Shown here: one piece after another, positions 4,165 through 64,000 of the stretch
How the letters are laid out: each line of letters begins with the position of its first letter
Numbering within the stretch: position 1 is the stretch's first letter
Assembly: GCA_904063045.1 (NCBI GenBank)
Contig: CAJFCJ010000023.1
Coordinates: 62,001-126,000, forward strand
Length of the DNA stretch: 64,000 nt
From: Dimorphilus gyrociliatus
Taxonomy: Eukaryota; Animalia; Annelida
Direction of reading: 5' to 3'
The notes under the pieces: model-generated
Told to the model about the DNA's origin: nothing
The model's database searches: none
What the model saw: only the letters and a program-made list of their open reading frames with translations
Made by a program: the position numbers and the translations under genes

Positions 4165-7100
4165 ATGGCACAAAAAATGGATACTAGTGATTATCCTATG
4201 ACTGCTACAACCATTTCCACTGTTGCTGTACAAAGTGGAAAAGCCAAAATTATTTTGGCTATTTTAAGAGTAAGTTACCTATACATATACTTTAGTCTAC
4301 TTTTCTACAATTATAATTATATTACTATTGTTTCTAAAAATAGTTAATAAAACAATCATAATAATTGTTGCATAAGAGATTCTAAAATTAAAATCTCCCA
4401 AGAAGAAATAACATACTATAACTTTAATCATACCAAAAAAAAGCTTTAACATAAATTCTTATAATCATTCTATTTTTGCTCCAGTGAAAAATATTGGAAT
4501 TATTTTTAGTCTGTTAGATTTACACGTTCATGAATCATATCTAGAATTACTAAATATCATTTTAACATCCGTATCAACAATTTCAATTGCCAGACAAATA
4601 TCAAAGAGCTAATAAATATTTGTTATCATAAAAAATCTTATTAACACTATTAGTTAATTAATTAACTAGGAAATTTTCAACAAATATATTTATATAAATA
4701 TATAAATATACATATATTTATATAGAATGATAACTTAAAGTAAAAGTTGTTAACTCTTAAACTAAGTACACGTATGGATATGAGCGTATTTATATATAAA
4801 TATACTAGTATATAAAAATATACTAGATTCATATAAAGGAAAAGAAAGAAAGCCCTAGCGCAGCATAAACTTAAGCTAAAACTAGCTCCAGCAGACCTAC
4901 TGCAAATGTAGTAGGCCTAAGCAGACTGTCTGCGGTACGCTCGGCAACACGCAACTGCTAGATGGTATAAAGTTTCAGAATTCTTACTTTCTGACTCATC
5001 TTAGCGGTATGCAACTTCTTCTGCATCTTGTCAGAATTATTGCAGTGTTTAGTCATATGTGCAGACTGCAGAAGGTGTTTTCGTAGTCTTGCAGTGTGTT
5101 TGTCCTGGTTATTTATATCTCTTTGAAGTATTTTTATAATTCATGCTAGAAGAAGTAGAGTTATTCCTGAAATAGAAGGTTATATAAGCAAGTTAAACAG
5201 CAAGATTTACATTTTCTCCAATTAAAGGATTGTTTACACTTTACCATCGTGCTGGGTCTTGTTTCTAGCCTATATCTTATAAAATTATTTGGTCAATTTA
5301 AAAACATGCTTTTTAAAACATTCACTCTCGGATGAACAATGTTATTTATAACAATAAACTAGTATTAAAGTTTCATTTTCATAAAACATTTCATGAAAGC
5401 ATTAAAATTTAACATTTTAAATATAAATATAAAGAGAGCCGTTAAAGTTGAGTTAAGAATTTATCATAATATGTCAAAATAATTAGAATTAAAAATAAAG
5501 GTTATATCTATTTTGCTAAAAGTTACACCATCTTATCTGGGCAAGTAGATCAAATTTAAAAATAACATAAAAACCACTTCAAACATACTAAAGATTCCCT
5601 GTAGCAAGTCTACGGTTTTTTATGTAACATTCCTCTGATATCAGCCCAAGTATAAAAAAAGGAAGACTTGCAAAATTAACATTGATGACTAATTTTATCA
5701 TTTAATTCAGCATTCTATCATTTGGAAGATAATTAAAAAGTTTATACTTTTATAAGTATTTCATTGTTTATTTAATAACCACAGAGTAATGACTGGGTTC
5801 GAGTTCGAATTCAGCAAATGGAACCGGACCTTATGGATGCCGGTGTTTCACTCGATGAAGCCAGACGCTTGAGAGATCAGCATAATGACCTATTGGTTAA
5901 ATTGCAGGTTAATATTTAAACTTACTGAGTCCTTCGATGGTATAACTTTATTAACTTGTTTTTCTATTAATAGCAAAAGCAAGCTGATGTCATAAAGCTT
6001 TTACAACAAGCTGATGAGGCGGTTATAGCTGATCTTGAAAGACAAGGAGCAAGTGAAGATCAACAACAAATGCTTTACTCTGCTATGACAGAATCCTTGT
6101 CCGAAGCTTGGAAAGATTTAACTTCTCAGTTAGAATTAAGAAAGCTACTTTTAGAACAAAGTATTGCTTTCCACTCAGCGGCCAATTCTTTTAGGTAATC
6201 TATGAAGAAATAGTATTTCTCCCTTTTGATGATTCTACTATTTCGTTTTATTCATACTATAGTGCCCAGATGCAATCTGCCCAGAGTCAATTCAATAACG
6301 TTGGTATTGCCCATGATATTGAAACTGCTAGAAGACTTTTAGATCAGCATCAAAATTTCAAGAAAAATATCTTGGAGTCTTCAATGAATACTCTGCAAGA
6401 GGGGCAATCCCTTTTGTACAGGATAAGGGAAATGGGTATGCACGCTGATGTTCAAAGCAGACATGCGACGACGGCTGCTTGTTATGGAATTGAGCACTTA
6501 CTAGAATTATTGCAGGTTTGAATCAACTTTCTTTAAATATTGCTATTTATTTAATTGGAATATTGCATTATAATTTCAATTCTTATAGGATCGAAGACGC
6601 CAGCTGGATGAGCTATGGCTTCAAAGGAAAATTCAACTAGAACAGTGTTTACAAATGCTCTTATTAGATAAGGAAGTTCATAAAATTTCTGAATGGTTTA
6701 CATCGGTTGGAGATCAATATCTCAGCATAACCGATCTAGGAACAGATTATGCTTCTGCTGCACAGCTGCAGCAAAAGCATTATCAGTTTGAAATGCAAGC
6801 AAAGGTAATATACAAGCTCACCAAAGTATTATACATCTAACAAGTATTCGTATCGATATTATAGGAAATGGAGGAAACAGTCCTTCGACTTATTCGTACG
6901 GCTGATCAACTTGTTCACAGTTCGCACTATGACGCCGAAGGTGTTCAAAGACGCCTTAAACAAGTTGACTCGCAAAGTGAATCATTTATGCTAAAAATGG
7001 ATGATCGTAGGCGTAATTTGGCTATGGCAACATCATTTTTTTCTCAAGCAAAATCAACTCTTGGAAAATTAGCGGAAATCGAAAGACAAGTAAAAATGGA

Positions 7101-10100
7101 TGATAGTTCAACAATGGCTGATGCTTACCATGTTATTTCTACTGCTGTTGTCGAAGCAACAAGCTCTGCTCTACATGATGGTCGAGCTCTATTGGAGAGG
7201 ACAGGCCGCGGTGATTCCGGCTGTAAAGGAATTATTGATATGGTATATTTATATAAAATTATAATATTATATAACAATTAACATAAAAATGCATTTATAA
7301 TTAATGGTTAATTACACAGTTGGAAATAATTGAAACACGAGCTCATGATCTGTTGAAGAGTTGCGAATCAAAATGCGATACCAGCTCAAAAAGTCCTCAG
7401 TACTATGAATTTCAAGATAAATACACAGAATTATACACATGGTTAATTCGTATCGTTCAAACGATGTTAGAACAGGAATCTCAACTTGGAGACAACTTAA
7501 CTTCATCCAAAGACTTTTTAGATGCACACGAAAGGCTTTACGATGATATGCAATCTAAACAGTGCAATGTAGAGCGAATCGTCAAATTGTCTAACGATTT
7601 ACAAGGCTCGAGCGATATTGTCGCCGATGATGTTGACAGAAAGGTTTTCTGCTATATTTCAAAATCTTTTTCTTGATTTTAATCTTTGATTTTTCTTTAA
7701 GGTATCAACTTTAAGAGATCAATGGAATAGCCTACACGACTCTGTAGAAAGAAGAGTACATTTATCATTAGCCTATGTCGCCTTTCATAAGACAGCTATG
7801 CACTTATCTCAAAAGATGGATGCGCTTGAACAATTTGTTAAAATTGAAAAAGTCGATCCATCTACAATAACGGACGGATCTGTGAAACATAAGGAAGAAA
7901 CTTGGCAAGAAATGAATAAAGGATACAATGATGTTGAATCAAGTGGAAAATCTTTTGTTAATAATGCTGCTGAGGTTGTTATATAAAAAACGTTAATTAT
8001 ATATCTCTAACATTATTTTGAAAATAGTTGAATGAACGTTGGTTGGATACTCCTCATGCTGTTCGCGTAGTAGAGACGACTATTAGTAGATTAAGTCAAC
8101 GACGTCGTCTCCTCTCTGACTACTACGAGAATTGGCGTGTTCATGTGACTAGCGGACGAGAATTCAAGTCTCAATGGCACCAATTTATTCAAGATGCTAG
8201 AAAGGTAATATCTTTTATTCAATTTAAGTTTCACTGCTTGTCTCAGTTATTGTATAATATTTACGAATACGTGAAATCTTGCTGCGAAAAAGTCGTCAAA
8301 TGTAATAAAATTCAAATATTCTTAACAGACAATTGACAACATAATGCGCAAAGAAGACGACTTTTTCCCAGCAATTGCCGCCGAACTAGGCTCTTCGGCT
8401 TCGAATACTAACGAATATAGAAAAAAATTAGAAGAATTCAGACCATTTGTTCGGGTAAATATATATTTCTTTATTTATTTATTAACAGACAATCACTTGG
8501 ATAATGGAAGAGGAAAAAAATCTTTTTCGTCCTTATATCGCTGGTTATTTAGGCAAATCACCAAGCGATATTCAAACTATGAAGGAAAAACTTCACAAGT
8601 TTCAACCTATTGTTAAGGTTTCGAGAATCATCCGATTTTTTCAAACCAATACAAATTTACTACTTTTAATCATCAATTTTTTTGATTCTACTAATTTATT
8701 TATTTTAATAGAAAGCGCAAGAGGAAATTGAAGGTCATCTTAGAATGGCGGAAAAGCTGTCTTTGAAAGGGGATAGTCATGGTGAAAAAGAAAAGATTGT
8801 TAATGAACTCTTGAAAGTTCATTCTAGACTTTCGGCTCGTGTAAACGAGTATAATATACTTTTGAATATGACAAGTAGATTTTTCGAACAGCTAAATAAG
8901 GTTAGAAATTGAACGATTTTTGGACTTTTTTCAAGTGTAATAATGCTTTTAATTTTTGTAGCTGGATGAATTAATTTCAATGACTGAGAAGCAATACAAA
9001 GCGACACCTTTACCTAAGGATGTTGCCCATGCTGAAATTATGCTTCAACAGCATGAAAATAATAGACATAAAGTTTTAAAACAGATTGATTTCGTTGCCG
9101 ATGATGGAGAAACTATTGTGAAGCGTGTGAGGCAACAAGATTCAGAAGCTACTGCAAAAGACGAAGTTCAGAATGTCCTGCAGCTTACCGAAGATAGACG
9201 AGAGACGTGGGAAAGAGCTTGGGAAGCTCAACGTCGAAAACTGGAACAGAATTTACATATATGCCAATTTTATTTCGATTTAAAAACCGTAAGTTTTTAC
9301 TCTAGTAATTTTTTAGAAATTTTTATTATTATAACATGTTTTTATTCATTTCCATCAGCTGCATTCAGAGCTTGATGAATTACATCGTCAATTAGAGGCT
9401 AAAAAGGGCAACTACGGAACGTCTCTTTCATCTGTTAGGACTATTTCTGAAGCCTTTAAAGCCTTCGAATTAACGACTGAGCTCGTTAAGAAGAAACTGG
9501 ATAACTTTGAGCAGGCATCGAAGGAAGAACTTTCTTCAATCGACGATGCCGACTCCGCAAGTATTGAAAGAGAAATTGATTCGTTAAAGAGAAAGTGGCA
9601 AGCATTCTGGGATGCTGTTCAAATGTACAGAAGAGCTCTTGATGTTGCTGAAGATTTCTTCAATGAAATGGAAGAAGTAGGCATTCAATTTACTTATTAT
9701 TCACTCTTATTTAATTAACTTTATAAACTTAACCAGTGCGAAGAATTTATCAAAACTATTTACGACGTATCTTCTAAAATAAGAAAAGATGCCGTCAAAT
9801 GTACAACTTCTCAAGATGTGGCTTTACTATTGAAAACTTTGGATAACTTTAGAAAAGAGGGTTGTAACAAGCAAAATGAACGACTATCAAATATGGATGA
9901 TAGAATAAACATTGTTTTTGGATCTAGAGGGCAGAGTCGCCTAAAAAATATTGTTGACAGGTATGGAAACCAATATTAATTTTCAATAAAAAAAAATAAA
10001 TGTAATAGTGTCAACCTAAGGAGATTAGATTCTATAGATTAAAAATTTATCTTGAAGTCTTTCTTATATTTGTATGTCTTGACAGCTCGACTGTCGTTTA

Positions 10101-10441
10101 TTTTGTTAAATAATATTTTAAGAATTAAGTTTATGTTCAAGATAATCTTGCAATAATAATGTGCTGATTAATGTAATGTTAATGACTTAATCCACTTGCT
10201 CAAAATATTTATGCTATTACGCCTGATTAAATTTAATGACTATCTATCATACTTATTATAGGAATAATGAAGCCGTTAATCACCTTAGTCGCGTTGTGGA
10301 TGAGTTATCAGAAATCAATGATCACTTAATTAAAAAAGAACAGCTTGTTTCCGTAATGGAGCAGGTAGTTGACGCTCCGAAAACTGCTAAACCGAAAATT
10401 ACAAGTCCTTTACAAAATGCTCAGGTCACAGAAGGTCAAAG
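4165..10441 (+). CDS. N-terminal CCDC141/zormin/SESTD1-like spectrin-repeat rod (about 1,140 aa)
   Basis: Exons 4165-4269, 5785-5907, 5974-6194, 6263-6515, 6589-6804, 6865-7242, 7320-7643, 7702-7974, 8028-8204, [8329-8454 or 8489-8617], 8712-8900, 8962-9288, 9359-9676, 9737-9960, 10262-10441. Helical repeats with spectrin-type Trp and LG-x-x-x-A-x-x-L-x-x-x-H motifs. ATTISTVAVQSGKAKIILAILR, YSAMTESLSEAWKDL and LLELLQDRRRQLD match the recalled human CCDC141 segments TTTVSSVAVQAGDSKIVIAVIK, YDAMAETLGEAWAAL and LLELLQDRRRQLD. Confidence 0.88.
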
Positions 10442-13400
10442 GTAAGTTCAAGTAAATTTATTTATAGCCTGAAAAAAGTATATCATAAAGTAACCCTTTT
10501 CATAATTTTACTTATAATAATATTACAGAGTTGTAATGGAATGTCACATCCAAAGCGATGTTATACCGAAAATTGAATGGTATAAAGACAATATATTAAT
10601 ATCTTCTCCCGACTATCAACCGCACTTTCAAAATGGAAGAGCAACATTAACAATTGACGAAACTTTCCCGGATGATTCTGCAAATTATACATGCAAAGCT
10701 TTAACTCCAACAGGGAGTGCAGAAACTAGTGCCAATCTGTTTGTTAAAGGTATATGATAAACTTTTAAACTAACACTCACCTACTGTTATTCAGTTGTGC
10801 TAATTTTTTGATACATTAAATTCGTTTGTTAATAAAGCATTAGACCAAAATTCAATAGGTAAACTTAAGTAAATACCTGTAGAGGTATTATTATTTATAA
10901 TGAGTTTTAGACCTTTAAATATTCAGCCTACTTTTTTTACAAAAAAGTTTACCTGCATTTAGGCTATAAATACCATTAATTCATTATTTATCTAAGATAT
11001 TAAAATCATTTTGTTTACAAAAAAATATATTTTTACAGGGTTTAATTCAAACTAAACTATAAATGCTTTTACTTCTTGTTTATAATTGAGAAGGAATTAT
11101 TTTTAATTGCTTTGTTTTATTGATGATTGTTAGCATTCTCTAAATCAATACCTTTTTTTATAGGCTTAGCTTTATCTATACCCTATTTCTTTAAAAATAA
11201 GAGACAACTCTTACTTTTTATTATATGCTCAATTTATTCATTTTCAACTTTTCGAAACACGTTGAAAGTTTATACTGCATTGTAAAAAAAAAATTGTTTA
11301 ATGTATCAAACTCTTACACAAACTGATAACACAATTACTATGCACTCTAACTCTCCGCTTCTCACTTCTAATTTTTCTTAGAAACTCACCGTAAAGTAGA
11401 TCCTCCCGAATTCACCCGGCAGCTGCGGTCGGTATGTGAGGTACCGGAAGGTACCCAGCATGTTCTTGAGTGCCATGTTACCGGAATACCCACACCAAAT
11501 ATATCGTGGATGAAGAATAATGAGTGTATCGATGATGAACCGGAATACGTTATAACAAAGATCAACGGAACATGTTGTCTAAAGATCAGGAGAGCCACTC
11601 GGGAGCACTCCGCAAAATATACATGCTTAGCAGCAAATAACGGGGGTTCTGCTAGTAGTTCTTCAACTGTTCACGTTTTTCGTAAGTGTTCTTCGCAAGT
11701 GCACAATTCTATTTTTACCTTAGAATTCAAGAGTATCATTCAATCATCGATACAATGCTTTAAAATTATATTTGTAACCGCTTTTTTTGCTTTTTCCTAT
11801 CAATCTCTATCATTCATCTGCTATGATTTGTAACACTTGGAAGACGCAAAGGGAAAGTTGCATCTTTGAACAATGATAAATCCTTTAAGCAATTCTTATA
11901 AAGAATTTTGACAGTAATAGCTGAATTTTACACAAAGACCTAAATATTTAATGCTCTTCTGTTCATATTTATATTTGGTACTTGAAAAAAAATCTTTAAA
12001 TACTAAATATAAATAAAACTATAAAGAAACTCTGACGTTTATTAAAAGTAAAGTAAAACCGAATTTTTTTATAATGAATCGTAAAATTTTTATCAAAGAA
12101 AACTCTTAGATATTGTACGAAATCGGAAAATGAAAGATTTGTTTAAAAGCATCCTTTGCAAAAATTCCTTTAACCATTAAAGTTTTTCTAAAATTTTAAC
12201 TAAAGGTCAAAATACTATTCTTGCAGCGGTTGAAAAGCCCATAATTAGAAAACAACTACCGAATGTTGCTGCTACTGAAGGAAATCCCGTTAAACTCAAG
12301 ATGGACTTTAGCGGGAGACCACCTCCGCAGGTCACTTGGCTAAAAGGAGATAAACCAATACACAATTCTCACGTTCACAAGGTAAATAAAGCGTTAGGTC
12401 TTCTATTATAAATCATAATTACAACTCGCTTAAGACTAAATAAGGGGAGGTCGCAAGACTTTTAACACTTATACGATAAGTTAGTTTTTTAACTAGCTCA
12501 CTTATAGAAATCGTTTCAATGTTGTTTTTTCATTACAAGTCGTAGGGAAAGTCGGCGAAATTGAGTTAGGCCTGGATTGCAAATAGAGAAGACACACTTC
12601 AGTTATTGCATTTAATGTCGATACCTTTCACAAACTAGAGCTTTTTTTTATTAAATTTTCAACTTTTCTTATTAACTTGTAAAGAATTCTTAAAAAATTC
12701 CTTTTTTAATAATACTTTATAATTGTAAAACTTTTTAATTACATAATAGCTAGTGTCATATATCCAGTATATAAAATTTTTGGAAGATTATGTCACGCTG
12801 AAATATGATCCAATAATATGAAATCCATTAATCCGTTAATCCGTTAAGCTGTCTGCCAACTGCGTTTTACGGGAGGTGTTAGAACTGTTGTACCCTTAAA
12901 GTTTTGATCGGTATCTCTTCGATATTCGGTCCATGCAGATGTTTCAGACAATTTAATCCTTTTTAATCCAAAATCGGAGTGACCTTGTTAATAAACTTTA
13001 TTTTAGCAAATACTTATTTAATTTTATCAAATACATAAAGGATTAGGAATAATGTAGAATATTTATTCTAAGCACCCTTAAAGAGTTATGCTATATACCA
13101 ATCGGTCTAATGACCCTAGATCAAAAGCCGAATGAAAATAAAATAAGATTGAGATAAGAGTTTTCAAGCACTAAACTTACTCTTTAGAGATTTATTTTTC
13201 TCCATATATTCGCAAGGGTATACAATCCTAATAGGCATAGGTTGAAGAAAGACAACTTCTGTCTCCGAAACGAAGTTTAGAACGTTGCAATCTGACATCA
13301 TCCTTTTAAGTTAGACTGATCCTTAAAGAATAAAAATGAAAATTAATAATTATTTATAAGATATGCCAAAAATATTTAATAACTTTCAAAAAATCTTCAA

Positions 13401-16400
13401 TGGTATATTTACATTAATACTTATGACTATAAAAATTAATAATATATATAATTTATGTTATATTATAAACTGTATAGTCCAAAAAAGTATACATCAAGAC
13501 ACTTAGCGGTCTACTGCACGACTTTTGGGCGTATTCTAAAATGAAACTTACGAGGTTAAAAGTAGGCAATTGGGAATTTCTATTCAGCTGTCGCATACGA
13601 GTTTAATAAAAAAACGTACCCGATTATATCGCTTATCAATGTCGAAAAGAACTGTCAATATATTTGAATAGATATTGCATAAAAATTTGCAGCTAGTGCT
13701 CAAGGATAAACAATAACTGCTTATGACGCAGTGTTAAACAAATTTTACATTTTGACTTGACCTGACCCGACCTATCGGTCGTTGTTCTACCAATATCCTT
13801 GCAAGTAGTTTGTTGTATTGGGGCTACCAACTATTATGTGTGACACTAGGTGTTCCTATTGGAAAAAACAAATCGGAGGATTTGAAATGTTGTTTTAATG
13901 AGTTTAGTAGGATTTGTAACCCTTTTTAATTCGAATCAGTAGGAAACTTTGATCCCCTATTATTAATACGAATACTCAATAAAGATTTATAACAGAGTAA
14001 AAATTTAAGATAAGAAAAAAGATAAGTGTGTTGGTAAACATTGAATTAACTTAATAAAAAATCTAAACTTTTTCTTTTAGGTGTAAGCGTATTTAACAAA
14101 AACTATGTACGCAGGTATATTGTACTGTATTTACGTATATAAAATATAATATACCTTAATTGATTTGTAAATTTGAGACCTTATTTATGTAAAATTCTTC
14201 TGCGTTCAATTATAATTTGAACTATTAACCTGAAAAATCTATTTTTTATGAACAATTTGAATAAGCAGCAATTTTTACCGAGTTATTATTTAGTTTATTC
14301 TGTTACGCTCCTTATTGTAGTCTCTCTTTTCAGACCGTTCATAAACGAACGTTTATTTACGGATTGTGTTATGCGAATGTAAACAATCTGACGTTCTAGG
14401 CTATTTGAGTTTTACATTCTGAAAGTATCAAATATCGTTAAACTGATAAGAAATTTTTATAGACTCAATCTATTTTTCTTTCAAAACGATATGATCTTTT
14501 AGACAATAATATAACTTTGACGAGTTTATTCAACGATGATGGCTTAATATGTCAAGTAATTAGCATTGTATATGTAGTTAAAATACTTAGATTTTATCGC
14601 ATCTATTTATGAAAGATGATTATAATGGGTGTGTTTAGAGTAAAAGTTTACAAGCATTTCCTATCCTATTCACATGTTTGTTGAATAATCCGATTATTTT
14701 CACCGTTGATTAACTCCTTTTGAACTATATAATTGGAAAAGTACGAAAATAACACAAATTCTTCTTAGAAAACAGTCTACTTTAAACACTTAACAAACTT
14801 TACGAACAAGTGTCAAAACGTTATATTTCATAATAAAATATATAATTTAGATTTTTTTGCTCTCAATTCAATAGAAATATCTACATGCGAAACAAACCTT
14901 TACTTTTATCAGGTCGATTTCAGTTTGAAAAGTAAATTTAAGATTCAGATTGTAAATACTTGTACTAAATGTCAGCCTACGGTCTAGTTTTTATCGGTGA
15001 ATCAAATTTTAAGTATTATAATATACAATAATATAATAAAGATACAGTAGATGTATATTTATATTGTTATTTATTTTTGTATTTACTTCAATTTACTATA
15101 TATGCATATGTGCACAGTATGTGGATATATAGTACGTTTACTGTATGCAGTATACACACATATATATATATATACTGTATATAAATATATATATATAGTA
15201 TATATGACGATGGTTTTGAGTAAGCATTAGCTTTTAAAATTGAAAGAATATCGTATTATATTACAAGCGAAACTTGTTTCATAAATAGATCCCGCATGAC
15301 TCTGTTTTTAACATATATAAATATATATTATATCAGCCTTTTTTCAAGTTCAGGTACAAGCCTTGATATATATATATACTGTCTATATAGTATTTCATAG
15401 TATTTCGGCCTAGAATAAACTTCTCTTATTAGTTAATTTATGCAAAAATTTTTCTTTTATTATTATCTTTAAATTTTTTTGTGAAGATAGAATAAGAAAG
15501 GAAAATAATAATTTTTTATTAACGGGTAGAGCTTTCTTATGTGTTTAATTTACCGTGTAGATTTTTATTCGGTTTAAATACATTTAATATAGCCACCATA
15601 TATAGAGTTTTGATTTCTTTTACAAAAGAATTTTTAACTAAAAAGGAACCAACCAAAGTCCACTTTTAGTCGACTTTACTTTAAAATATCTTAGTTAGAT
15701 ATTATGGAAAAATTAAATAATATAATAAAATAACAACGACACTATTCTTATGCTAATAAATGGGAATTTAATGGGCAAACAAATGAATTTTTAGTCTCGG
15801 TTCCTCTTAAGATTTCTTTATCAACACCTATCAAAAATACACCAACTTCCTATTTGTTACTTCAAGTGACATTTAGGAGAAAGGCCTACTATCTCTAATA
15901 TATCTACTTTTGTATAGATCGTGTTTGTATGAAAAGGAATATGTTTTAGTTTTGCTCTTTTCAGGTCACGGTTGCTGAACATCAAACGACGTTGGAAATC
16001 GTTCGATTAACTCCTGCTGAATGCGGAACTTACACTGTTGTACTTAAAAATCTCGGTGGTGAAACAAGATCATCATGTCTTGTTTCCCTGTCCTCAGGAT
16101 CTATACCGTCGGATATAGATCATCAGAAGCCTCAAGTCTTGGAACCGCTACGTAACGTTGATCCGAAATTAGGCCAAACAGTTTTTCTGGAATGTATTAT
16201 AGCAGGAGCAACCGAATGCGAAATTACATGGTATCACCAAAACCGTCCTATTAGAGAAAATAATCGAATCAAATTTCTGTTCGACGGTGACAAATGTTGC
16301 TTGCGAATTAGTAGTCTTAAAAATGAAGATTACGGATCTTATATATGTTCAGCTACAAATTTACTTGGAACGGGTAAAACTCAATGCGCAGTTATCCCAC

Positions 16401-19400
16401 CTGTTAGGTCACCAGATCAAGCTGAGCCACCTCATTTTACACTTTTGCTCAAAGATCTCGAAGATTATGAAGGCGAAATGGTTAGATTCGAATGCTGCGT
16501 AAATGCATATCCAAATCCTACTATCAAATGGTTCAGGAATGGGAAACCAATTGAACATTCAAACGATTTTCAAATATCTAATATTAACGAATTACAAATT
16601 CTTACAATACCCGAAGCTTTCAGAGAAGATGGAGGAAATTTTTGTTGTGAAGCCAAAAACGTTGCAGGAGAAGCTAAATGCTATGCGACCCTCATTGTTA
16701 AACCTATGTCTGAGAAACATGTCATGAAAACCCGATTACTAGAAACATCTCAAACTGTAAAGAAAACTCTCGTTGGCGATCATTTGCAAAAACCGCCTGA
16801 ACTAGTTAGACCTTTTAATGATTTTAAGGCAAGACCAGGTAAACCTTGTAGAATGGAAGCGGAATTATCCGGAAATCCAGAGCCTACAGTTACATGGTAC
16901 TTTAACGATGAACCGATCGTATCACCCGATTATCAGATATCGAGAAATGGTAACGTTCACACTTTATACATACCTGAAGTTTTTGACGAAGACGCAGGGA
17001 GATTTTCACTTATTGCTGAAAATTCTAACGGTAAAGCCACCTGTACCGCTCTGTTAGTCGTTGTTCAAGACACTGAAATTGACGATATAACCGACAATGC
17101 ACAAGCCAGAGAGCATATGACTGTGCCAAGTATTGCGCAAAAGAGGGCGCTTTCGCCGAAACACTTCTCTCCTGTTGTTGGTTCTCCCCGGGGTCCCTCT
17201 CCCAGGGACCTCGGTAGGACATACCAACAAGTCGATCTTACAATGGAGGTTCCAATTCCACCTAAATTCCTAAAGGAACTAAAGAACATTACTGCGATGG
17301 AGGGAACTAGAGTGAAATTTGACGCAGCTGTAGAAGGCAAACCAAATCCAACGATAAAATGGTTTAAAGAAGGTAAAGAACTAAACGACACAGCCGACTT
17401 TGAAATATCTTATAGGAATGGAAGAGTCGAATTGGTAATTCCTGAAGTATTTTGTGAAGATTCTGGGAAGTTTGATTGCGTAGCAAGCAATAAAGCCGGA
17501 ACAAAAACATCTTCAGCTGAATTAATAGTCAAAGGTTAGTTATCTTACCATATAAATAGAGTTTCTTAAACTTTTCATTGAATATATTAGAATTACATTT
17601 AGGCTAGAGTAAAATAAGAAAGCACTTGAATTTGAAAAAGAAACTTAACAAGTTTCTACCTTAAGATGTATTGTAAATATTATTTTGAAAGAATTTAACA
17701 AATTTTATTTAGAATATAAAAGTAGGTAGAATTATTATAAAAGTTGTCGCCATAAAGTTTAGGCGAGAACCGTAAAATGCTACTTTGTATAAAAGTTTAA
17801 TAATCAGCGATCATTCTATTGGGATTTTAGTTTCTTTGTACCTTACTTCAAATTATTAATTAGATATTTTCTGGCTTTACAAAACATACCCGTGATTAAA
17901 TTTTTACAGTGTACGACTTTACTATAATAGGACAAGCGTCTAGGCTATATTGAATATAATTTATAGACTTTGAGTTGTAAAAGAAATAGACCAGGCCTAG
18001 GATATTATATGTGATATTTGCGGAATATAAGCTAAAGTGTTTGTAGTGTTGTTTATAATCTTGAACCGTTTTCTCCTTTGAATAGATCTTTAAATTTAAT
18101 GTGTTTTGTTAACTACTATATTCGGAGTTCCTAATATTTTTACTTTATTGTGTTATTAGCGACAAAAGCTCTTTATATCCGTTGCAATTAACCCCTTCCA
18201 TAGCCTCATGTCGACTTTTATAGCTTAAATGTTTTATTATTGTAAGGGTGATTATATAGATAATAGCGAAAGAAAATCCTATTCCTTATAAAAACACCAT
18301 AAATTACATACTTTTTGTGCTGCTTTCTCAATTGCTTTCAATGAAATGATGAATGTTCTCTCCTACTTTATCTTGATATCAAATCATCCTCTTTTTAAAT
18401 GTTACTACGACGAATTCCATAATAGAGAGTAATTGGTCATTATTTTCGTAGATAATAATAATTGTTGTAATAGGTCGCTTGTGTACACATATTCTACATT
18501 TGTATATTCTATTTATGTTATTAATATTGACTTTAAAAAGTTCAAAAAGTATTCAATCACTTGTGTTTAGAAAAGTATTTTTTCTTTCAGAAAATTCAAT
18601 TAAACTCGTTTTTGCACAAATTTTATTCACCTTAAATGTCTATATACAAGTTTTCAATTTGCGTCTTTCTTGCACCCAGTAATACTTCTAGAGTTAACTT
18701 TGAAAATAACCGGATCTTCGTAGCGTTTAATCATTGTTGGATCATATGATTTAGACTTTCTTTTACTCTTTAAATCCTCTTCCAGCATAGCATTTATATC
18801 CTTTGCCAATTTTTCTTGATTACTTGTCAATATTTTTAAAGTTTCCATTATGTGATCGAGCTTTTTGTTTATGACACTTAAGTCATGTTCTAAAGGATTC
18901 GCCATGAAGTTTTTTCTCTTTTATGATGGTTTTTCGAAATATCTTATTATCTTTTGCTGTAGAATGCTACTTTACCTTGTTTTGATGAAAGAATGACTGA
19001 ATAGTAATTTTATCTAGACTTGTAGAAATAAGTTTGCCAACAATTGATAAAAGTATTAATAGTTAATAGATCAAATTATATTGAAAGAAAGACAATTAAC
19101 TGTAATAATTTACCTATTATTATATTTTTGAGTTTTAAAGAATAATTGTAAAATCGTTTTTTTGCTATTTTATTGTAATCTCATTTTTTTTAAAATCTTT
19201 AACAGCGTCGTTAATTCCCCCATCGTTTATTGACCGCCTCCAATCTTCTGAAGTAAGGGAAGGCGATAAAGTTTTAATGACTGTTAAAGTTTCTGGAGAT
19301 CCACCTCCTGAAGTAACTTGGTACAGAGAGGCAACTAAGATTGTGTCCTCTGCTGATTTTGAAATTAAGACTGCAGGAAATGTAAGTTCCTTATATATTC

Positions 19401-22400
19401 CTGAAGTCTTCTATGAAGATTCTGGAAAATTTACTGTTGTTGCGGAAAATGAAGCTGGCATAGAACGTTGCACAGCCGAGTTAATTGTTGAAGGTAAAGT
19501 TTATAAATGAAATGAAATGCAATTATAATTCGTATTCAATATTCTTTGTTTAGCTCCGTCCGCTATCGAGGAGTCAGCTTCACCAAGCCCTCCAAGAAGT
19601 CCTTCTATCACTCAATCTCCAATGAGATTCGCTGCCCCACCAACAGCTCCACCAAAAATACCTGAACCCCCGTCGGCTCCGCCTATGTTCAAACCAACTA
19701 AACCAGTCCAATTCTTAAAGGTGATCCGCTTTTCTCATCTATTATGTAAGCATTGTAAAATGCGGAGGACTATTTGACGGCAAATAGTATTTTTTTGGAA
19801 TAAACTGCCTCTATTGTAAAGTTTTAGTCAAGCGAAATTAATACGGCAGATTAAATCTGAGAAACTGTTAAATTAATAATCCTAAAGCTTATATGTTAAC
19901 AACTCTTAATTCAAACTTTTCAGCCTTTGAGGGACACAAAAGTTAAAGAAGGTCAAAGGTGCACTTTGGAATGTATTGTGCCTCCAGCTACCCGGCCTGA
20001 TAAAATACAATGGTTTAGAAATGAAGTTGAGATTCATCCATCTTTAGATTATGATATCAGATATGATCAAGGAAAATGTTGCTTAACAATAATTGAAGTC
20101 TTTGTAGAAGATGCAGGAATATATAAATGCAGCATTACAGTCGAAGGCTTAACAAACTCTACGACTATGGTTCTGGACATAGAGGCTGTACCACCGCCAC
20201 CTCCTCCACCTCCTCCTAAGCCTATATCTTCTCCTGTTCAGCCACATAGAGCTCCTGTTTTCCAGAATACAATGCCTCATCAACAATTGGCTAGTGGAGC
20301 AAGTGCATATTTTGAAGTCCAAGTTAATGGACATCCTCCGCCTGTAATCTCGTGGACTAGAATGGGACATCCAATAGTTGATAAAGTCAGGTAAGTTAAA
20401 CGCTAAGGGATTAAAACTTTCTTAAATAATTCGAATTAAAAAAATTACTATATGTATTCATTCTCTAATCCAGATTTGACTCAACTTATGACCAATACAA
20501 AGGAATAACCACATTGACAATAAAAAATCTTAATCTCAGCGATGAAGGAGAATATACCTGTACGGCTGAAAATGCAGTAGGAGCATCATCTACCTCAGCA
20601 TGGCTACTTGGCCCAGATCGGTATAAATTATGGAGAGAGCAAGGAACTCATCCGTCACGAATGCCGGAAAGAATTCCTGAAACTCATAAACCAGAAGAAA
20701 GAATTACAACTGAAACATCCTCTCCTTTGAGAACGCCACAAGATTTTGTTGTATCAGATTTTGAAAGTCGACTTAGAAAAGACGTGGCTGAAAGGGACAG
20801 AATGGATGGCCAAGCCTCTATACCTAAGTTTGAAAATGTATTAGAAAACAAACAAACGCCTGAAGGGGGGGAAGTTTCTCTCATATGCAAAGTAAATGGA
20901 ACCCCTCTACCAAATATTGATTGGTATCATAACGGACGTTTAATTAGACCTTCACGACGATATGAAATGAAAATGAACAAAGAAGGCTTAGTAATGCTAA
21001 ATGTAAGTTTTTAAGAAATATTTAAAAAAAAGCACTTTCAATTTTTGAAATAATAATTGATAAATAATTTTAGCTGAGAATGGCATTGCCCGAAGATTCT
21101 GGATATTATACTTGCTGTGCAACCAATCTTGCTGGCAGAGACACTTGCTCTGCTGAGCTAAATGTTGGTCCTATTTCTGTAATTGATGAGAGTTCCTATG
21201 TCGCTCCTGACACATTGAAAAGAATGATGAAAAGGTAAATTACACATAGACTTTGATAACTTTTTATTTTTAAAATAATTACAGTCCTCAAGATGTAAAA
21301 GATAGTGGAACAGGAGGCATTTTAGAGAAACACTTTAAACCAGTTTTCCGCAAGATACCTTTGGATCAACAAGTACCAGAAGGAAAGATGGTTCGATTTG
21401 ACTGTGTTTTATCTGGCCGACCCATACCAGAACTTTTCTGGTACTGTGAAGGAAGACAAGTATTTGATGATGATTTGCATAAAATCGTTGTGAATGAAGA
21501 TGGAATTCATTCTTTAATTATTAATTCGACAAGTCCATCAGACGCTGGACAATATCTGTGCATCGCTAGAAATAGAGCAGGAGAAGATCAATTCAACGTT
21601 CACTTAAACGTTCAATGTAAGAAATTAAGTCGTTTTGTTGAAAGTGTTGATAATTTTATTTTAATATCAGCTCAAGGTGAAATATGCCCTCCAAGATTCA
21701 TTGAACGAATGTCAGCTATGCAAGTCAAAGAAGGAGAACCGGTGTGCCTTACAACTGAATCTGTAGGCAATCCTACTCCTATGATGTCTTGGCAAAAAGA
21801 TGGAAAACATATTAATATGGATGATATGAGATACCGAATTGAGACCAATGAAGGAAGAAGTTCTCTTCATATACCGGAAGCGACTGCTCAAGATAATGCA
21901 TGGTTTCAATGTACTGCCGCTAATTGTACCGGAACAGCAACAAACAGAGCTAGATTGATTGTACAAAGTAAGTATAGAATATCGATATTTTTGGGTATTT
22001 GAAGACAAGGCATTTCTATAAATCATCCAATTCATAGTCGAAACAAGAAAGAAGGAACCAGAGAAAAAATTAGTAATACCGAGGAAAACAACTCCTACTC
22101 CGTAAGTTTAATTTTAGTGTATCAATTACTTTTATTTTAATTCATCGAAGTCGTCATTTATATTATTTAATGCCTTTTTATTTCGTATTTACCATCCACT
22201 CGATTTTTCCTTATAAAAACCGTTTAAATGATCCTCCTAATCCCTTGCTAGTATTGGAGTACAGTCTTATCAAAGAATGGATAAATACTCCAGTGAATTA
22301 CATCAAAGTTTGGAAGATATTAGATCCTATCCACCTGTTGAAATGACTTTCAACTATGGTCCCCAGAGTTCTATGTCCATGCCTACATTATTTAGGCCTT

Positions 22401-25400
22401 CTGGTCTGCCTCAATCAATTTTAAGACCTGAAACTCCTTCCTACTTTTCCGATACTGACGCAGAAGTTCCTAAAATTACATATAAACTATCAAAGGGTGA
22501 GAGTGATTTAAAATCACTCGAACCTATGGTTCCAAACTGGACCGCAAAGCCTTTTAGAAGGTCTTCAGATACTCGAATGGACATCTACAGGTGTGAAAAG
22601 GACTTTAATGGTGATATTTATGAAGATTTAATCAAATTGATTTTTCAGTTCACTTCAAACTGATAACCCTACCATTATTAAAAAATCCCCCATGAAAAGA
22701 CCCGGTGACAGAAGGTGTTTGTTGTTTGTGGTGTTCCGTATCACAATGCAAAGTTCCTTAGGATTCTTAAAAAATGGCGTGAATTTGTTACTTTATTTTT
22801 CATAAAAGGCTTACAAAACCTTCTAATTAACAAGCCTATACAAATTGTGCCATTATAATAGAAATTCCTTATTTTTTGCCTATTGTGATATAAAATGTAG
22901 ACGATCAGATATGACCTCAATACCCATTCAAACAGAATCTCATTATTTTTTTTTATATTCAATTCCAGTCCGATGACACAACATATTCCTCCAAAGCGCA
23001 CTCCAACGCCAACTAGGTTGGAGCATAGTATTGAATTGTCCAAACTAAGTCAATCACCTGCACCTCTCGAAGAGTCCCGAGCTAAAATTATCATGACTCC
23101 ACCATCAACACCACTTAGATCACAATCGCCCGCTGTTGGCTTTTCTACACAACCCGCTTACCAACCAGTGGTTCCTCAAAGACCTTCAGCTCCAGTTCAT
23201 AGAGCTCCTACACCTATTCAGGCTGTAACTATGCCTGTGCAAAGGTCTCAAACTCCAGTCCAGCCTGCAACTTTTAGCCTTAGAATGCCGCAGAAAACAC
23301 CTGCGCCTGCACCTGAGCCTCCCAGACAAAGAGCTCCTACCCCAGTACAGGCTTTTACAATGCCCCTATACCAAGCTACGCAACCGGCCGCTCCATTAAA
23401 AGATAGCTCTTTAAGAAGGATGATAGACGAAGCTGAGAGGTGGGAAGCATACCTGCCCTGAAACTATCTTTCTTGCCTTTTACCCCATTAATATCTTTGG
23501 TTATTCCCCCATTTCATAACTTCCGCATATTTCCCCTTTTTGCTCGAAAACCCTTATTCTACGAAATATTAACATCTTCTCCCAAATTAAAAAAAATTTA
23601 CCTTTCCCAACGTTTTCAAATAATAAAAGTAATATTTAAAAAAATCTATTAACCAACTTTTACAGTAACAACTAATGCCTTCCTCTACTTATCAAATCAA
23701 TTTTCAAGTATAATAATATAGTTGTTATTATTTTTAACAGTACTGGTCAACCTCCTGCCAAGGAGCCCAGATATTCGGAAAGCCCAAGTTTATCTATTGA
23801 AGAATTGATAAAGGAAGGGAAAGAGCCTGAACCTGCAAAAGAGGATATGTTCGATAAAACTAGGCCAATACCTCCTAAATTTAAAGTAACAGCTTCTTAT
23901 TCAAAGAATTTTGATCTTAATTTTTAAATTCATATATTGTTTTTAATTTTAGACACAACTCAAATCAAAGATGAATCTTAAAGAATCTGATAGATGTCAC
24001 TTTGAAAGTCGACTAATACCCATTAATGATCCAGATTTAACTGTTGAGTGGTACAAAGATGGAAAATTATTGAGAGCTGGACATAAATTTAAACCGATGT
24101 ATGACTTTGGATACGTTGCATTAGATATTCTTTACACATACGCAGAAGATAGTGGTGTCTATTTATGCAAAGCAAAGAATAAATACGGAGAGGATACTAC
24201 ACAAGCTGAAATAAAATGTTTTCCAAAAGACAGTGTAATCGAGGAATCTCAGTTACCCGAAGGAATAGACACAGTTCAAAAGATGGAAGCCATGGAAGAG
24301 TTATGGCAAGCACCTGTTGGAGACAGAATCGAAGACGAGCAGGAACATACTGCACCCATATTTGATTTAGTTCCTGAACCAGTTCAATGTAAAGAAGGAG
24401 ATACAGCCAAATTTTTGGTGAAAGTTGCTGGATTTCCGAGACCCAGGGTTACATGGTGGGTTAACAGCTCAATAGCTGTCAATGTAAGTAGTTTAATAAA
24501 TATCATTTAGCTTTGAATATTATCTAAAAAGCAACTTATTGTAGGGTGCTAGATATAAGTTACATTATGACGGAATGCTATATTCCTTGGAAATGCCAAA
24601 AGTTAGAGAATATGATAACGGAACTGTTAAAGTTGTGGCGAGAAACTCATTTGGCGAAGCTGAATGTTCAACTTCTTTGCTCGTGATACCAAGAGAAGAC
24701 TGGAGATCTGCTCTGACGCCGGCTCCCCGATGTGAGCTATACTTTAATAATATTGACAAAGAAATAATAAATTTTAATTTATATACTTAATTGAATTTTA
24801 GCCACTGTTCAAGTCGAACTGGATAAGCACAAGAATGTTGAATTAAGAAGCGTTGAATTAGATGAAAAATTGAAGAAACCTAAAGCAACGGTATCCGAAT
24901 TGAGGGCATTTGAAAGAGGTAGTCATTAATATGGTAGTATATAGAGGTAAAAATTATTTGCTTATAAAATTTCCAGACACTCAAGACCGAGCCCGACTAA
25001 AGAAAGATGAAGAAGTACTTCAAGCGTATCAAAACATAAATTGGCAGCATGCTACAATGGCTCATCAAAAATCAACTGCAGAGTTGCGTGAACACTCACC
25101 GCTTCTTGATAAGGAGTCGATAGTTCACGTAGAAAGAGCCAAAGCTATGCTTCAAATGGTCTCCGAATATAGAGATGAAGCAGCAAACAGACAATTTCAA
25201 CATAGTAAACCCATTGAAAAGCAACCACCTACGTTTTTAATGCCTTTGCAATCAGTAGTAACCAAGGAAGGCGATGCCATCAGGTAAACTTTGACACTTT
25301 AATACTGTAGTTCGTTTCTAACTAATATTTTTATTGCTAAAGAATGGAAGTTCATTTTACTGGTCTTCCAACTCCTCAAATTCAGTGGTTTAGAGAGGGA

Positions 25401-63327: not shown

Positions 63328-63944
63328 GTCAGTATACCAGAAAGAATGAGAGTTATAAAAAATCCGTGACTATTAAACAACCAGAAATCATTCACGATAG
63401 CTTTAGTTGTCGATTACATAGAAATTCAAATATGTATAAATCAGCCCATTTCGATTGTTTTACTATTCAAACAAATAAGAAGAATTATCAATTAGAAAAG
63501 TTTGAAAATAGGTTAAATACTAATTATAATAACCAACCGAAAAACATGATTAAACAATCCTCATTTATTGGTAAAAGAATTAATAGAAAATTTCAATATT
63601 TATATATTTATGAAATTCCTAATTATCTTTTAACAAAGATGAAAAATATTAAACCAAAATCGGTTTTAGATTACTTATCAGTTGTTGGTAAAAGTAATAA
63701 ATCTTGTCATTCGGATAGAATACCACCATGGAGAAAATGTACAAAATCAACTTATATTAGAGATAATAGTAAACAAATGATTTATCGTTTTGATCGAATT
63801 GAAAAAAAATCTTTTAAGAAAAAATTTCATAGGAAAAACTGTTTTTATTGGTTCGACTATTATCAAGGCTCTTCTCAACCTAAAATATACTTTAGGCCTA
63901 TACCCGCTATTCGTAAAATTCGTTATGCTTTTTTCATTAATTGA
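63328..63944 (+). CDS. Alternative basic C-terminal tail by read-through of the donor at 63328 (about 205 aa)
   Basis: The frame stays open for about 205 codons of very AT-rich sequence past the Ig-ending donor, to TGA at 63942-63944; K/N/I/Y/F-rich. Confidence 0.55.
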
Positions 63945-64000
63945 GTAAATAAGTACTAGTCGTCAATCGTATACGTTTATACATGTAAGGCCGGAGGGAT

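What the first reader, a model, noticed from the sequence alone, without database searches (positions are those of the whole stretch)
4165..24731. CCDC141-like spectrin rod and titin Z-disc region in one continuous reading frame
Seen: exons splice in phase with no stop from the spectrin-like rod (4165-10441), through Ig domains, into a titin-Z1Z2-like pair (about 17258-19493). Established (recalled): human CCDC141 lies immediately 5' of TTN on the same strand of 2q31, and Drosophila zormin (spectrin plus Ig) is encoded by 5' exons of the sallimus locus. The motifs here match CCDC141 at the N-terminus (STVAVQSGKAKIILA ~ SSVAVQAGDSKIVIA), middle (LLELLQDRRRQLD identical) and near its end. Inference: the ancestral bilaterian titin carried a spectrin-repeat N-terminus, and vertebrate CCDC141 and TTN arose by fission of such a gene, making CCDC141 the lost head of titin.
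Basis: partly seen in the sequence, partly recalled or inferred. Interest (0 to 1): 0.88.

Follow-up and report, generated by a model that had tools for sequence, protein, structure and literature searches.

The report
Annelid titin gene with CCDC141-like head
In this small marine worm, the counterpart of the vertebrate gene CCDC141 is the spliced front end of its giant titin-like muscle gene; this supports an idea published in 2025, so it is a solid new example and not a new discovery.

Summary
From the ATG at 4165, a chain of 31 canonical GT-AG exons reads 3,237 codons to 24731 without a stop, and the gene continues to the end of the window.

**RNA support.** Contigs from two independent runs of the same species show spliced joints at 9960|10262, 10441|10529, 10749|11382, 11681|12227 and 12381|15965. 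Depth is equal on both sides of the 3.6-kb intron. The 17534|19206 joint was not tested with reads.

**Rod identity.** Residues 6-1107 align end to end with mammalian CCDC141 (25% identity, E 1e-79). The N-terminal motif and LLELLQDRRRQLD both match. The rod carries Pfam DUF7799 and Spectrin_7. Kalirin and spectrin score far lower and are not collinear.

**Ig pair.** The two Ig domains at 17243-17533 and 19208-19492 are the most titin-Z1Z2-like of those tested. One-to-one orthology with Z1 and Z2 is not shown.

**Novelty.** The evolutionary reading is already published as 'connectitin' (Hanashima et al. 2025, PMC12198301; also PMC12657953). RefSeq 'titin-like' models of a scallop and an acorn worm already show the same fused layout. 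This is therefore a new, RNA-supported annelid member of a known kind. No SESTD1-like exons lie upstream in the window. Other first-stage notes on this window cover the duplicated exon pair and the Z1Z2 collinearity.

The parts
4165..4269 (+). Exon 1: start codon and the conserved N-terminal motif (TTISTVAVQSGKAKIILAILR).
   Evidence: This is the first ATG after an in-frame stop. The donor is GTAAGT. The motif is conserved in Saccoglossus, amphioxus, Trichinella, beetle, crayfish, scallop and mammalian CCDC141.
5785..10441 (+). CCDC141-like spectrin-repeat rod, exons 2-15: 5785-5907, 5974-6194, 6263-6515, 6589-6804, 6865-7242, 7320-7643, 7702-7974, 8028-8204, 8329-8454 or 8489-8617, 8712-8900, 8962-9288, 9359-9676, 9737-9960, 10262-10441. 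The last exon also begins Ig1.
   Evidence: Splice model. Pfam DUF7799, Spectrin_7 and Spectrin. Collinear with mammalian CCDC141 residues 5-1116. AlphaFold model of 6865-7242 is all-helical, pLDDT 81. Its only fold matches with TM over 0.5 are mouse and rat CCDC141 at residues 291-430. The 9960|10262 joint is seen in RNA.
8329..8617 (+). Duplicated exon pair 8329-8454 and 8489-8617, 34 nt apart. They are most likely mutually exclusive.
   Evidence: Both are phase 0 with AG and GT sites. 18 of 42 residues are identical between them. Both map to the same single position in every homologue. No read evidence was obtained.
10529..10749 (+). Ig1 (I-set), the first Ig after the rod.
   Evidence: Pfam I-set E 2.5e-15. 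RNA joint 10441|10529 in X5, X2 and X4.
11382..11681 (+). Ig2, a 300-nt in-frame cassette exon.
   Evidence: RNA joints 10749|11382 and 11681|12227, plus the skipping joint 10749|12227. X5 depths are 71 for inclusion and 126 for skipping.
12227..12381 (+). First half of Ig3.
   Evidence: Pfam I-set profile positions 3-51 of 90. RNA joint 12381|15965 in X1 and X5.
12382..15964 (+). 3,583-nt intron that splits Ig3.
   Evidence: Spliced out in X1 (483-nt contig) and X5 (1,193-nt contig). Depth is 193 upstream and 192 downstream. Depth is zero at 12400-12599.
15965..17534 (+). Large exon holding the second half of Ig3 and Ig4 to Ig7.
   Evidence: Open frame of 523 codons with four full I-set matches. 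X5 holds 100% of its sampled words.
17243..17533 (+). Ig7, a titin Z1/Z2-like Ig.
   Evidence: PDB search gives 125 bits to titin Z1Z2 (2a38): Z1 58 and Z2 66. Titin I65-I70 domains give 23-45 bits. Ig3b to Ig6 together give only 91 bits.
17535..19205 (+). 1,671-nt intron between Ig7 and Ig8. Not tested with reads.
   Evidence: Canonical GTTAGT..AG, phase 1. The joined product is collinear with Aplysia (51% identity over residues 1789-2032), Saccoglossus and scallop proteins.
19206..19493 (+). Ig8, a titin Z1/Z2-like Ig.
   Evidence: PDB search gives 116 bits to titin Z1Z2, best stretch on Z2.
19554..24731 (+). Proline-rich linkers and Ig9 to about Ig15: 19554-19720, 19924-20390, 20474-21002, 21074-21234, 21285-21967, 22038-22101(?), 22252-22590(?), 22969-23439, 23741-23885, 23953-24483, 24545-24731.
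   Evidence: Splice model. Pfam I-set. Collinear with scallop titin-like (residues 6-2693 and 2981-3237) and Trichinella Titin (residues 13-2665).
24802..64000 (+). Continuation of the same gene: more Ig domains, two very long Pfam-less E/T/K/V-rich exons (33691-37266 and 41989-49470, the latter with about 17 copies of a 138-nt repeat at 44188-46517), and an SH3-like domain in 50061-50855. No Fn3 or kinase domain was seen in the stretches scanned. The gene runs off the window.
   Evidence: Open frames, Pfam, composition, tandem repeats.
12719..17002 (-). Spliced antisense transcript. Minus-strand introns are 12982-13178, about 13321-13747 and 13322-16973. The last one joins an exon that overlaps the large Ig exon from 16974 on. 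It has no long ORF.
   Evidence: CT..AC joints and a loose end identical to 16976-17002 in X5, with depth up to 395.

Best explanation
This is the 5' third or so of one giant titin/connectin-type gene of the annelid Dimorphilus gyrociliatus. The organism name comes from earlier scan notes.

**Gene product.** Its own promoter and first exon (ATG at 4165) start a rod of about 1,125 residues made of spectrin-type three-helix repeats. This rod is the orthologue of vertebrate CCDC141 and insect zormin. The same mRNA runs on without interruption into a chain of I-set Ig domains. That chain includes a pair most like titin Z1Z2, then proline-rich linkers, long disordered repeat exons and an SH3-like domain. 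This is the layout of invertebrate I-connectin/D-titin.

**Shown.**
- The open spliced frame.
- RNA joints from the rod through Ig1-Ig3 into the large Ig exon, at equal depth on both sides.
- Orthology of the rod.
- Alternative splicing of Ig2.

**Inferred.**
- The rod anchors or positions the filament's N-terminus at the Z-line, costamere or nuclear envelope. In this worm that would be done by a covalent link. In mammals the separate CCDC141 protein does it by binding titin and nesprin-1.
- Vertebrates split one ancestral gene into CCDC141 and TTN.
For: - **Frame.** The 31-exon model has no stop, and an independent dynamic-programming model recovers the RNA-verified junctions.
- **RNA joints.** 9960|10262, 10441|10529, 10749|11382, 11681|12227 and 12381|15965 appear in two independent same-species runs. 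X5 depth is 193 before and 192 after the 3.6-kb intron, and zero just past the donor.
- **Ig3 is split.** That intron cuts an Ig domain in half, so the upstream part cannot be a complete protein on its own.
- **Selection.** 17 of 18 differences in related species are at third codon positions.
- **Rod versus CCDC141.** Residues 6-1107 match Moschus CCDC141 residues 5-1116, E 1e-79, with motifs identical. A family profile hits vertebrate CCDC141 at 631 bits, against kalirin at 402 bits (23% coverage) and spectrin at 327 bits. In the reverse search, CCDC141's best non-vertebrate hits are these rods, including the worm's at 305 bits. Fold matches to mouse and rat CCDC141 have TM 0.69. Pfam DUF7799 and Spectrin_7 occur in both.
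- **Whole-region collinearity.** Scallop 'titin-like' matches residues 6-2693 at 40% identity and residues 2981-3237 at 53%. Saccoglossus 'titin-like' matches residues 1-2243, and Trichinella Titin matches residues 13-2665.
- **Z1Z2 likeness** of Ig7 and Ig8.
Against:
- Contigs show adjacent joints, not one full-length molecule.
- Internal promoters or short isoforms cannot be excluded. Mollusc RefSeq 'CCDC141-like' isoforms end at positions matching worm residues 1384-1520.
- Both Z1Z2-like Ig domains prefer Z2, and no vertebrate titin sequence could be fetched for a domain tree.
- No Fn3 or kinase domain was found in the stretches of the window that were scanned, so the A-band part of a titin is not shown.
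- Muscle expression and the anchoring role are not tested.
Confidence: 0.85

Rival explanations
1. There are two neighbouring genes, a CCDC141/zormin-like gene and a titin-like gene. They are joined only by occasional read-through or conjoined transcripts, as reported for human FLJ39502(CCDC141)-TTN.
For: Human and fly precedents are cited in PMC12198301 and PMC12657953. Two introns that are unusually long for this genome (3.6 kb and 1.7 kb) could hold promoters or poly(A) sites. Mollusc 'CCDC141-like' isoforms stop near the matching position.
Against: Contig depth is the same before and after the 3.6-kb intron (193 versus 192 in X5; 5.4/4.2 versus 8 in X1). Depth is zero just past the donor. 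The intron splits Ig3, so a gene ending there would end in half a domain. All junctions are in phase. Scallop, acorn-worm and Trichinella models join the same parts.
Confidence: 0.1
2. The rod is a generic spectrin, kalirin or trio-type repeat region that was recruited independently. It is not the CCDC141 orthologue, so the resemblance says nothing about a gene split.
For: Kalirin/trio proteins were the best long hits for a single rod exon (E 1e-10). Spectrin repeats resemble each other in general.
Against: The kalirin hits are short, repeated and not collinear (at most 120 bits). CCDC141 aligns end to end over 1,100 residues from residue 5, with shared N-terminal and LLELLQDRRRQLD motifs. The two also share Pfam DUF7799. 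NCBI itself names the 40-42% identical mollusc proteins 'CCDC141-like'.
Confidence: 0.03
3. The continuity is an assembly artefact or chimera of the genome.
For: None found.
Against: RNA contigs from two unrelated studies and from related species carry the same joints. Independent genomes of other phyla show the same order of parts.
Confidence: 0.01

Closest known systems
'Connectitin' hypothesis: ancestral single gene SESTD1-CCDC141-TTN (Hanashima et al. 2025, J Mol Evol, PMC12198301)
   Same: A CCDC141-type spectrin rod lies directly 5' of, and is joined to, a titin-type Ig chain. The evolutionary conclusion (one ancestral gene, later split) is the same.
   Different: No SEC14 or SESTD1-type exons lie in the 4.1 kb upstream. 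An unrelated ORF and an amine-oxidase gene lie there instead. The paper says the gene 'diversified into three genes in bilaterians'. Here, and in scallop, acorn-worm and Trichinella models, the CCDC141 and titin parts are still one reading frame.
Drosophila sallimus (sls) locus with zormin 5' exons (Burkart et al. 2007, as cited in PMC12198301 and PMC12657953)
   Same: Spectrin repeats plus Ig domains are encoded by the 5' exons of the titin-like gene, and transcripts span both parts.
   Different: The fly sequence was not compared directly. A Drosophila titin isoform's N-terminus (residues 87-617) aligns with worm residues 2156-2708, downstream of the Z1Z2-like pair. The fly zormin/titin border may therefore not match the vertebrate CCDC141/TTN border.
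Vertebrate CCDC141 (e.g. Moschus berezovskii isoform X2, 1,527 aa; mouse E9Q8Q6)
   Same: The N-terminal motif, DUF7799, LLELLQDRRRQLD and about 1,100 collinear rod residues are shared. The rod is followed by I-set Ig.
   Different: CCDC141 is a separate gene that ends after one Ig, and it has about 290 extra residues between rod and Ig. The worm protein carries on for thousands of residues.
RefSeq predicted 'titin-like' proteins: Ylistrum balloti (7,355 aa, partial) and Saccoglossus kowalevskii XP_006823021.1 (6,732 aa)
   Same: The head-to-Ig architecture is the same from residue 1. Identity is 40% over worm residues 6-2693 (scallop) and 32% over residues 1-2243 (acorn worm).
   Different: These are computational models in other phyla. 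I found no paper describing them, and I did not check their RNA support.
Vertebrate titin Z1Z2 (PDB 2A38, 1YA5)
   Same: Ig7 and Ig8 score higher against Z1 and Z2 (58-66 bits per domain) than against I-band Ig domains (23-45 bits). They are followed by a unique linker.
   Different: Both prefer Z2. Six Ig domains precede them. Telethonin binding is untested.

Membership tests
CCDC141 / zormin family (rod) | Conserved N-terminal motif and Pfam DUF7799 (PF25075) near the N-terminus | tested here: met
   DUF7799 scores E 3e-12 on 6267-6518. The motif aligns with CCDC141 and 10 invertebrate homologues. Precomputed Pfam lists PF25075 for Moschus CCDC141.
CCDC141 / zormin family (rod) | Collinear spectrin-type rod of about 1,100 residues, and reciprocal best match | tested here: met
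   Worm residues 6-1107 match CCDC141 residues 5-1116, E 1e-79. The reverse search ranks the invertebrate rods, including the worm's, directly after vertebrate CCDC141. This was tested within the fetched set, not a whole proteome.
CCDC141 / zormin family (rod) | Rod followed by I-set Ig domain(s) | tested here: met
   Ig1 starts about residue 1130.
CCDC141 / zormin family (rod) | Lies immediately 5' of titin on the same strand | tested here: met
   Here it is the same reading frame, and it is spliced in RNA.
Titin/connectin, invertebrate I-connectin/D-titin type | Long tandem array of I-set Ig domains with unique linkers | tested here: met
   Pfam I-set matches run from 10400 to the end of the window.
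Titin/connectin, invertebrate I-connectin/D-titin type | Long disordered, repeat-rich spring exons (PEVK-like) | tested here: inconclusive
   There are 1,192-aa and 2,494-aa Pfam-less exons, E/T/K/V-rich (P+E+V+K = 37-41%), with about 17 copies of a 46-aa repeat. Proline is low, so they are not classic PEVK.
Titin/connectin, invertebrate I-connectin/D-titin type | N-terminal Z1Z2 Ig pair | tested here: inconclusive
   Ig7 and Ig8 are the most Z1/Z2-like of the Ig domains tested. Both prefer Z2 and they are not N-terminal. No domain tree was possible.
Titin/connectin, invertebrate I-connectin/D-titin type | Fn3 super-repeats and a C-terminal kinase | not testable with these tools
   None was found in the stretches of the window scanned with Pfam. 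The gene runs off the window at 64000.
Titin/connectin, invertebrate I-connectin/D-titin type | Expression in muscle and sarcomeric location | not tested
   Only whole-sample RNA runs were available.
Connectitin (single gene SESTD1-CCDC141-TTN) | SEC14 domain and SESTD1-type spectrin repeats at the 5' end of the same gene | tested here: not met
   tblastn with SESTD1-like N-termini of 8 homologues finds nothing before 4165, only weak cross-hits inside the rod. The upstream DNA holds an unrelated ORF end (3-1298) and a minus-strand amine oxidase. A site further upstream, outside the window, is not excluded.
Connectitin (single gene SESTD1-CCDC141-TTN) | CCDC141-type rod continuous with the titin Ig chain | tested here: met

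The most novel reading that the evidence does not exclude
**Timing of the split.** The CCDC141/titin split may be specific to vertebrates, or at most to chordates, and not a feature of bilaterians as the published model says. Annelid RNA, and gene models from molluscs, a nemertean, a hemichordate, amphioxus (as far as Ig8), Trichinella and arthropods, all keep head and Ig chain in one frame.

**An old joining point.** The start of exon 2 (worm residue 36) may be an ancient point where modules are joined. Predicted proteins of Owenia, Haliotis, Tubulanus and Octopus that carry a SESTD1-like part all begin to align exactly there. Proteins without a SESTD1-like part use the conserved 'TTISTIAVQ' first exon instead. 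That would make the kalirin-like layout of several internal promoters ancestral. It would also make the non-covalent CCDC141-titin binding seen in mammals the remnant of a former covalent link.
Probability: 0.4. Interest if true: 0.45.

Novelty: new member of a known kind. Interest (0 to 1): 0.3.

Why it matters
This gives transcript-level support, in a third major animal lineage (Spiralia), for the published idea that CCDC141 is the detached head of an ancestral titin. It also narrows when the split happened.

The worm has a very compact gene: about 60-nt introns and 3,237 codons in 20 kb. That makes it a convenient system for asking what a spectrin-type head does for a titin filament. The answer bears on why CCDC141 variants associate with human cardiac traits.

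It does not open a new question, because the concept and the fused gene models are already public.

Tried and rejected
- **Automatic exon model.** The first dynamic-programming model over-split the gene into 121 exons. A version with a per-intron penalty skipped real rod exons and invented an 81-nt intron inside the large exon. I therefore fixed the model by hand, using short-intron compatibility, homologues and RNA.\n- **Single-exon search.** A search of 1.84 billion representatives with one rod exon found invertebrate homologues and kalirin, but no vertebrate CCDC141. An alignment-based search was needed to reach it.\n- **Vertebrate titin.** The search meant to fetch vertebrate titin N-termini returned hemicentins, obscurins and nematode giants. 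No Ig-domain tree for Z1 and Z2 could be built.\n- **SESTD1.** The search for SESTD1-like exons upstream was negative.\n- **Loose ends.** Most loose contig ends inside the big intron map nowhere in the window, so they could not be read as alternative exons or promoters.\n- **CCDC141's single Ig.** I considered using it to place the fission point. I rejected this because Ig7 gave the highest scores of the worm Ig domains I queried against the PDB, including to non-titin proteins such as DCC, so CCDC141's best match to Ig7 says little.\n- **Fold search.** E-values are weak (0.3), as is usual for helical repeats. Only the TM scores and the matching positions are informative.

Full report
**What is in the sequence.** The window is AT-rich (26-37% GC) with very short introns. 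Earlier notes of this scan name the genome as the miniature annelid Dimorphilus gyrociliatus. On the + strand, open stretches with coding character run from 4165 to the end of the window.

I built an exon chain from canonical GT..AG sites, phase compatibility and short-intron preference. It has 31 exons from the ATG at 4165 to the donor at 24732. That is 9,712 nt and 3,237 codons with no stop. The exons are listed under 'parts'. Two small exons (22038-22101 and 22252-22590) are uncertain.

**RNA evidence.** Two RNA data sets hold the locus at 99% identity or more. X5 is a 2017 run of 'organism C' whose contigs lack the introns. X1 is a 2024 coral metatranscriptome. X5 and X1 hold 1.00 and 0.75 of the sampled words of the large exon. 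They hold 0.64 and 0.56 of the rod region with its introns.

Laid on 10200-16199, their contigs show these GT..AG joints:
- 10441|10529
- 10749|11382
- 11681|12227
- 10749|12227, which skips the 300-nt Ig2 exon
- 12381|15965, in an X1 contig of 483 nt and an X5 contig of 1,193 nt

One 1,460-nt X5 contig runs from 10749 back over 10262. Its continuation is identical to 9929-9958, at the 3' end of the exon that ends at 9960. Rod, Ig1, Ig3 and the large Ig exon are therefore joined in RNA.

X5 contig depth is 193 for rod and Ig1. It is 71 for Ig2 inclusion plus 126 for skipping. It is 192 for the contig that crosses the 3.6-kb intron, and zero at 12400-12599. This argues against a major terminator or promoter in that intron. 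The intron also cuts Ig3 in half.

Two related species (X2, X4; 90-95% identity) carry the 10441|10529 joint. By my count, 17 of their 18 exonic differences fall on third codon positions of the predicted frame.

It is supported only by collinear homologues.

**The rod is the CCDC141 orthologue.** Rod exons match Pfam DUF7799 (E 3e-12), Spectrin_7 (E 1e-7) and Spectrin (sub-threshold).

One rod exon, searched against 1.84 billion representatives, found collinear long proteins with the match at residues of about 285-450:
- Saccoglossus 'titin-like' (6,732 aa)
- Schistocerca 'titin homolog' (about 3,000 aa)
- Trichinella 'Titin/unc-89'
- an amphioxus protein

Kalirin/trio appeared as repeated, non-collinear hits in the same search.

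Further searches brought in mollusc proteins that NCBI names 'CCDC141-like', and then vertebrate CCDC141 itself at 631 bits. Kalirin scored 402 bits (23% coverage) and alpha-spectrin 327 bits.

Pairwise comparisons gave these results:
- Worm residues 6-1107 align in one piece with Moschus CCDC141 residues 5-1116 (25% identity, E 1e-79).
- TTISTVAVQSGKAKIILA aligns with TTVSSVAVQAGDSKIVIA, and LLELLQDRRRQLD is identical.
- In the reverse direction, CCDC141's best non-vertebrate hits are these invertebrate rods, including the worm's at 305 bits.

An AlphaFold model of exon 6865-7242 is all-helical (pLDDT 81). Its only fold matches with TM over 0.5 in Swiss-Prot are mouse and rat CCDC141 at the matching residues.

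**The Ig part is titin-like.**
- From about residue 1130 there are I-set Ig domains separated by proline-rich and unique linkers.
- Further downstream lie two giant Pfam-less exons rich in E, T, K and V. One holds about 17 copies of a 46-residue repeat.
- There is also an SH3-like domain.
- This is the layout of invertebrate I-connectin/D-titin. No Fn3 or kinase domain was found in the stretches of the window that I scanned.

Against solved structures, Ig7 (17243-17533) gives 58 bits to titin Z1 and 66 bits to Z2, against 23-45 bits to I65-I70. Ig8 (19208-19492) gives 116 bits to Z1Z2. Ig3b to Ig6 together give only 91 bits, and the two Ig domains of 21286-21966 give 82 bits. The pair is thus the most Z1Z2-like of those tested. 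It is also the best-conserved Ig stretch against Aplysia (51% identity). However, both domains prefer Z2, and I could not fetch vertebrate titin for a domain tree.

**The same architecture elsewhere.** The whole 3,237-residue product is collinear with these proteins:

| Protein | Worm residues matched | Identity |
|---|---|---|
| Ylistrum balloti RefSeq 'titin-like' | 6-2693 and 2981-3237 | 40% and 53% |
| Saccoglossus 'titin-like' | 1-2243 | 32% |
| Trichinella 'Titin' | 13-2665 | 25% |
| Aplysia | 2-1734 | 42% |
| Amphioxus models | as far as Ig8 | 28% (B. floridae model, worm 436-1946) |

Predicted proteins of Owenia, Haliotis, Tubulanus and Octopus, and an amphioxus 'kalirin-like' protein, carry a SESTD1-type part in front of the rod. 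Four of these begin to align exactly at worm residue 36, the first residue of exon 2.

In this window there are no SESTD1-like exons upstream. The DNA there holds the end of an unrelated ORF (3-1298) and a minus-strand amine oxidase (1816-3180).

**Comparison with the literature.** Hanashima et al. 2025 (PMC12198301) already proposed that SESTD1, CCDC141 and TTN descend from one gene, 'connectitin'.
- They equated fly CG15822, zormin and sls with the three human genes.
- They found the fused form in cnidarians and placozoans.
- They cited transcripts that span CCDC141-TTN and zormin-sls.

A second paper (PMC12657953) shows that CCDC141 binds titin and nesprin-1, and it calls zormin the CCDC141 orthologue. 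These are the only two papers in the library that use the term.

This locus adds three things:
- RNA-level proof in an annelid.
- The point that the CCDC141-titin part is still one frame in many bilaterians, whereas the paper's conclusion speaks of three genes in bilaterians.
- The hint that exon 2 is an old joining point.

**Verdict.** The locus is a new member of a known kind. The open points are:
- the untested joint at 17534|19206
- possible internal promoters or short isoforms
- one-to-one identity of Ig7 and Ig8 with Z1 and Z2
- where SESTD1 lies in this genome

Noticed in passing
window 8329-8617 (+): There are two similar phase-0 exons of 42 and 43 codons, with 18 identical residues, only 34 nt apart. 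Every homologue has a single copy at that position. Some homologues resemble copy a more (Owenia, Aplysia) and others resemble copy b more. This looks like a mutually exclusive pair enforced by an intron too short to splice. The pair was also noted separately by the scan (s1-082299).
   Followed up: partly
window 11382-11681 (+): Ig2 is a 300-nt in-frame cassette exon. RNA shows both inclusion (X5 depth 71) and skipping (depth 126). A related species (X2) shows the skipping joint.
   Followed up: yes
window 12719-17002 (-): A spliced antisense transcript without a long ORF lies inside the 3.6-kb intron. One of its introns (13322-16973) joins an exon that overlaps the sense Ig exon. In X5 its depth (up to 395) is about twice that of the sense gene. 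This recalls the antisense transcripts of vertebrate TTN.
   Followed up: partly
window 1816-3180 (-): An intronless 454-aa flavin amine oxidase gene (Pfam Amino_oxidase, E 9e-60) lies just upstream of the titin-like gene.
   Followed up: partly
window 3-1298 (+): A 432-codon open frame enters from the left edge of the window. It is low in complexity and has no Pfam match. It is the 3' end of an unrelated gene.
   Followed up: no
window 44188-46517 (+): About 17 tandem copies of a 138-nt (46-residue) unit, 75% alike, lie inside the 2,494-codon exon. The spurious Pfam 'NIL' hit probably comes from this repeat. It is a candidate elastic segment.
   Followed up: partly
window 50061-50855 (+): An SH3-like stretch (Pfam SH3_9, E 4e-4, below the curated cut-off) is followed by an Ig domain in one exon.
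   Followed up: no
window 21286-21966 (+): The first Ig of this exon matches the palladin (2dm3) and myotilin (2kdg) Ig domains at 92-93 bits. That is higher than the whole two-Ig exon scores against the titin Z1Z2 chain (82 bits).
   Followed up: no
P0188 and P0184 (Drosophila titin isoforms) versus worm residues 2156-2708 (window about 20474-21967): The N-terminus of these fly titin isoforms aligns downstream of the worm's Z1Z2-like pair. The fly zormin/titin border may therefore differ from the vertebrate CCDC141/TTN border.
   Followed up: no
run X1 (coral metatranscriptome, 2024): A coral metatranscriptome holds this worm's transcripts at 99% identity or more, so the worm or a very close relative was present in that coral sample.
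   Followed up: no
P0107 (amphioxus 'kalirin-like'), P0141 (Octopus CRAL-TRIO protein), P0109, P0110, P0119: These are public gene models that join a SEC14/SESTD1-type part directly to the CCDC141-type rod. In four of them the alignment to the worm starts exactly at residue 36, the exon 2 boundary.
   Followed up: partly
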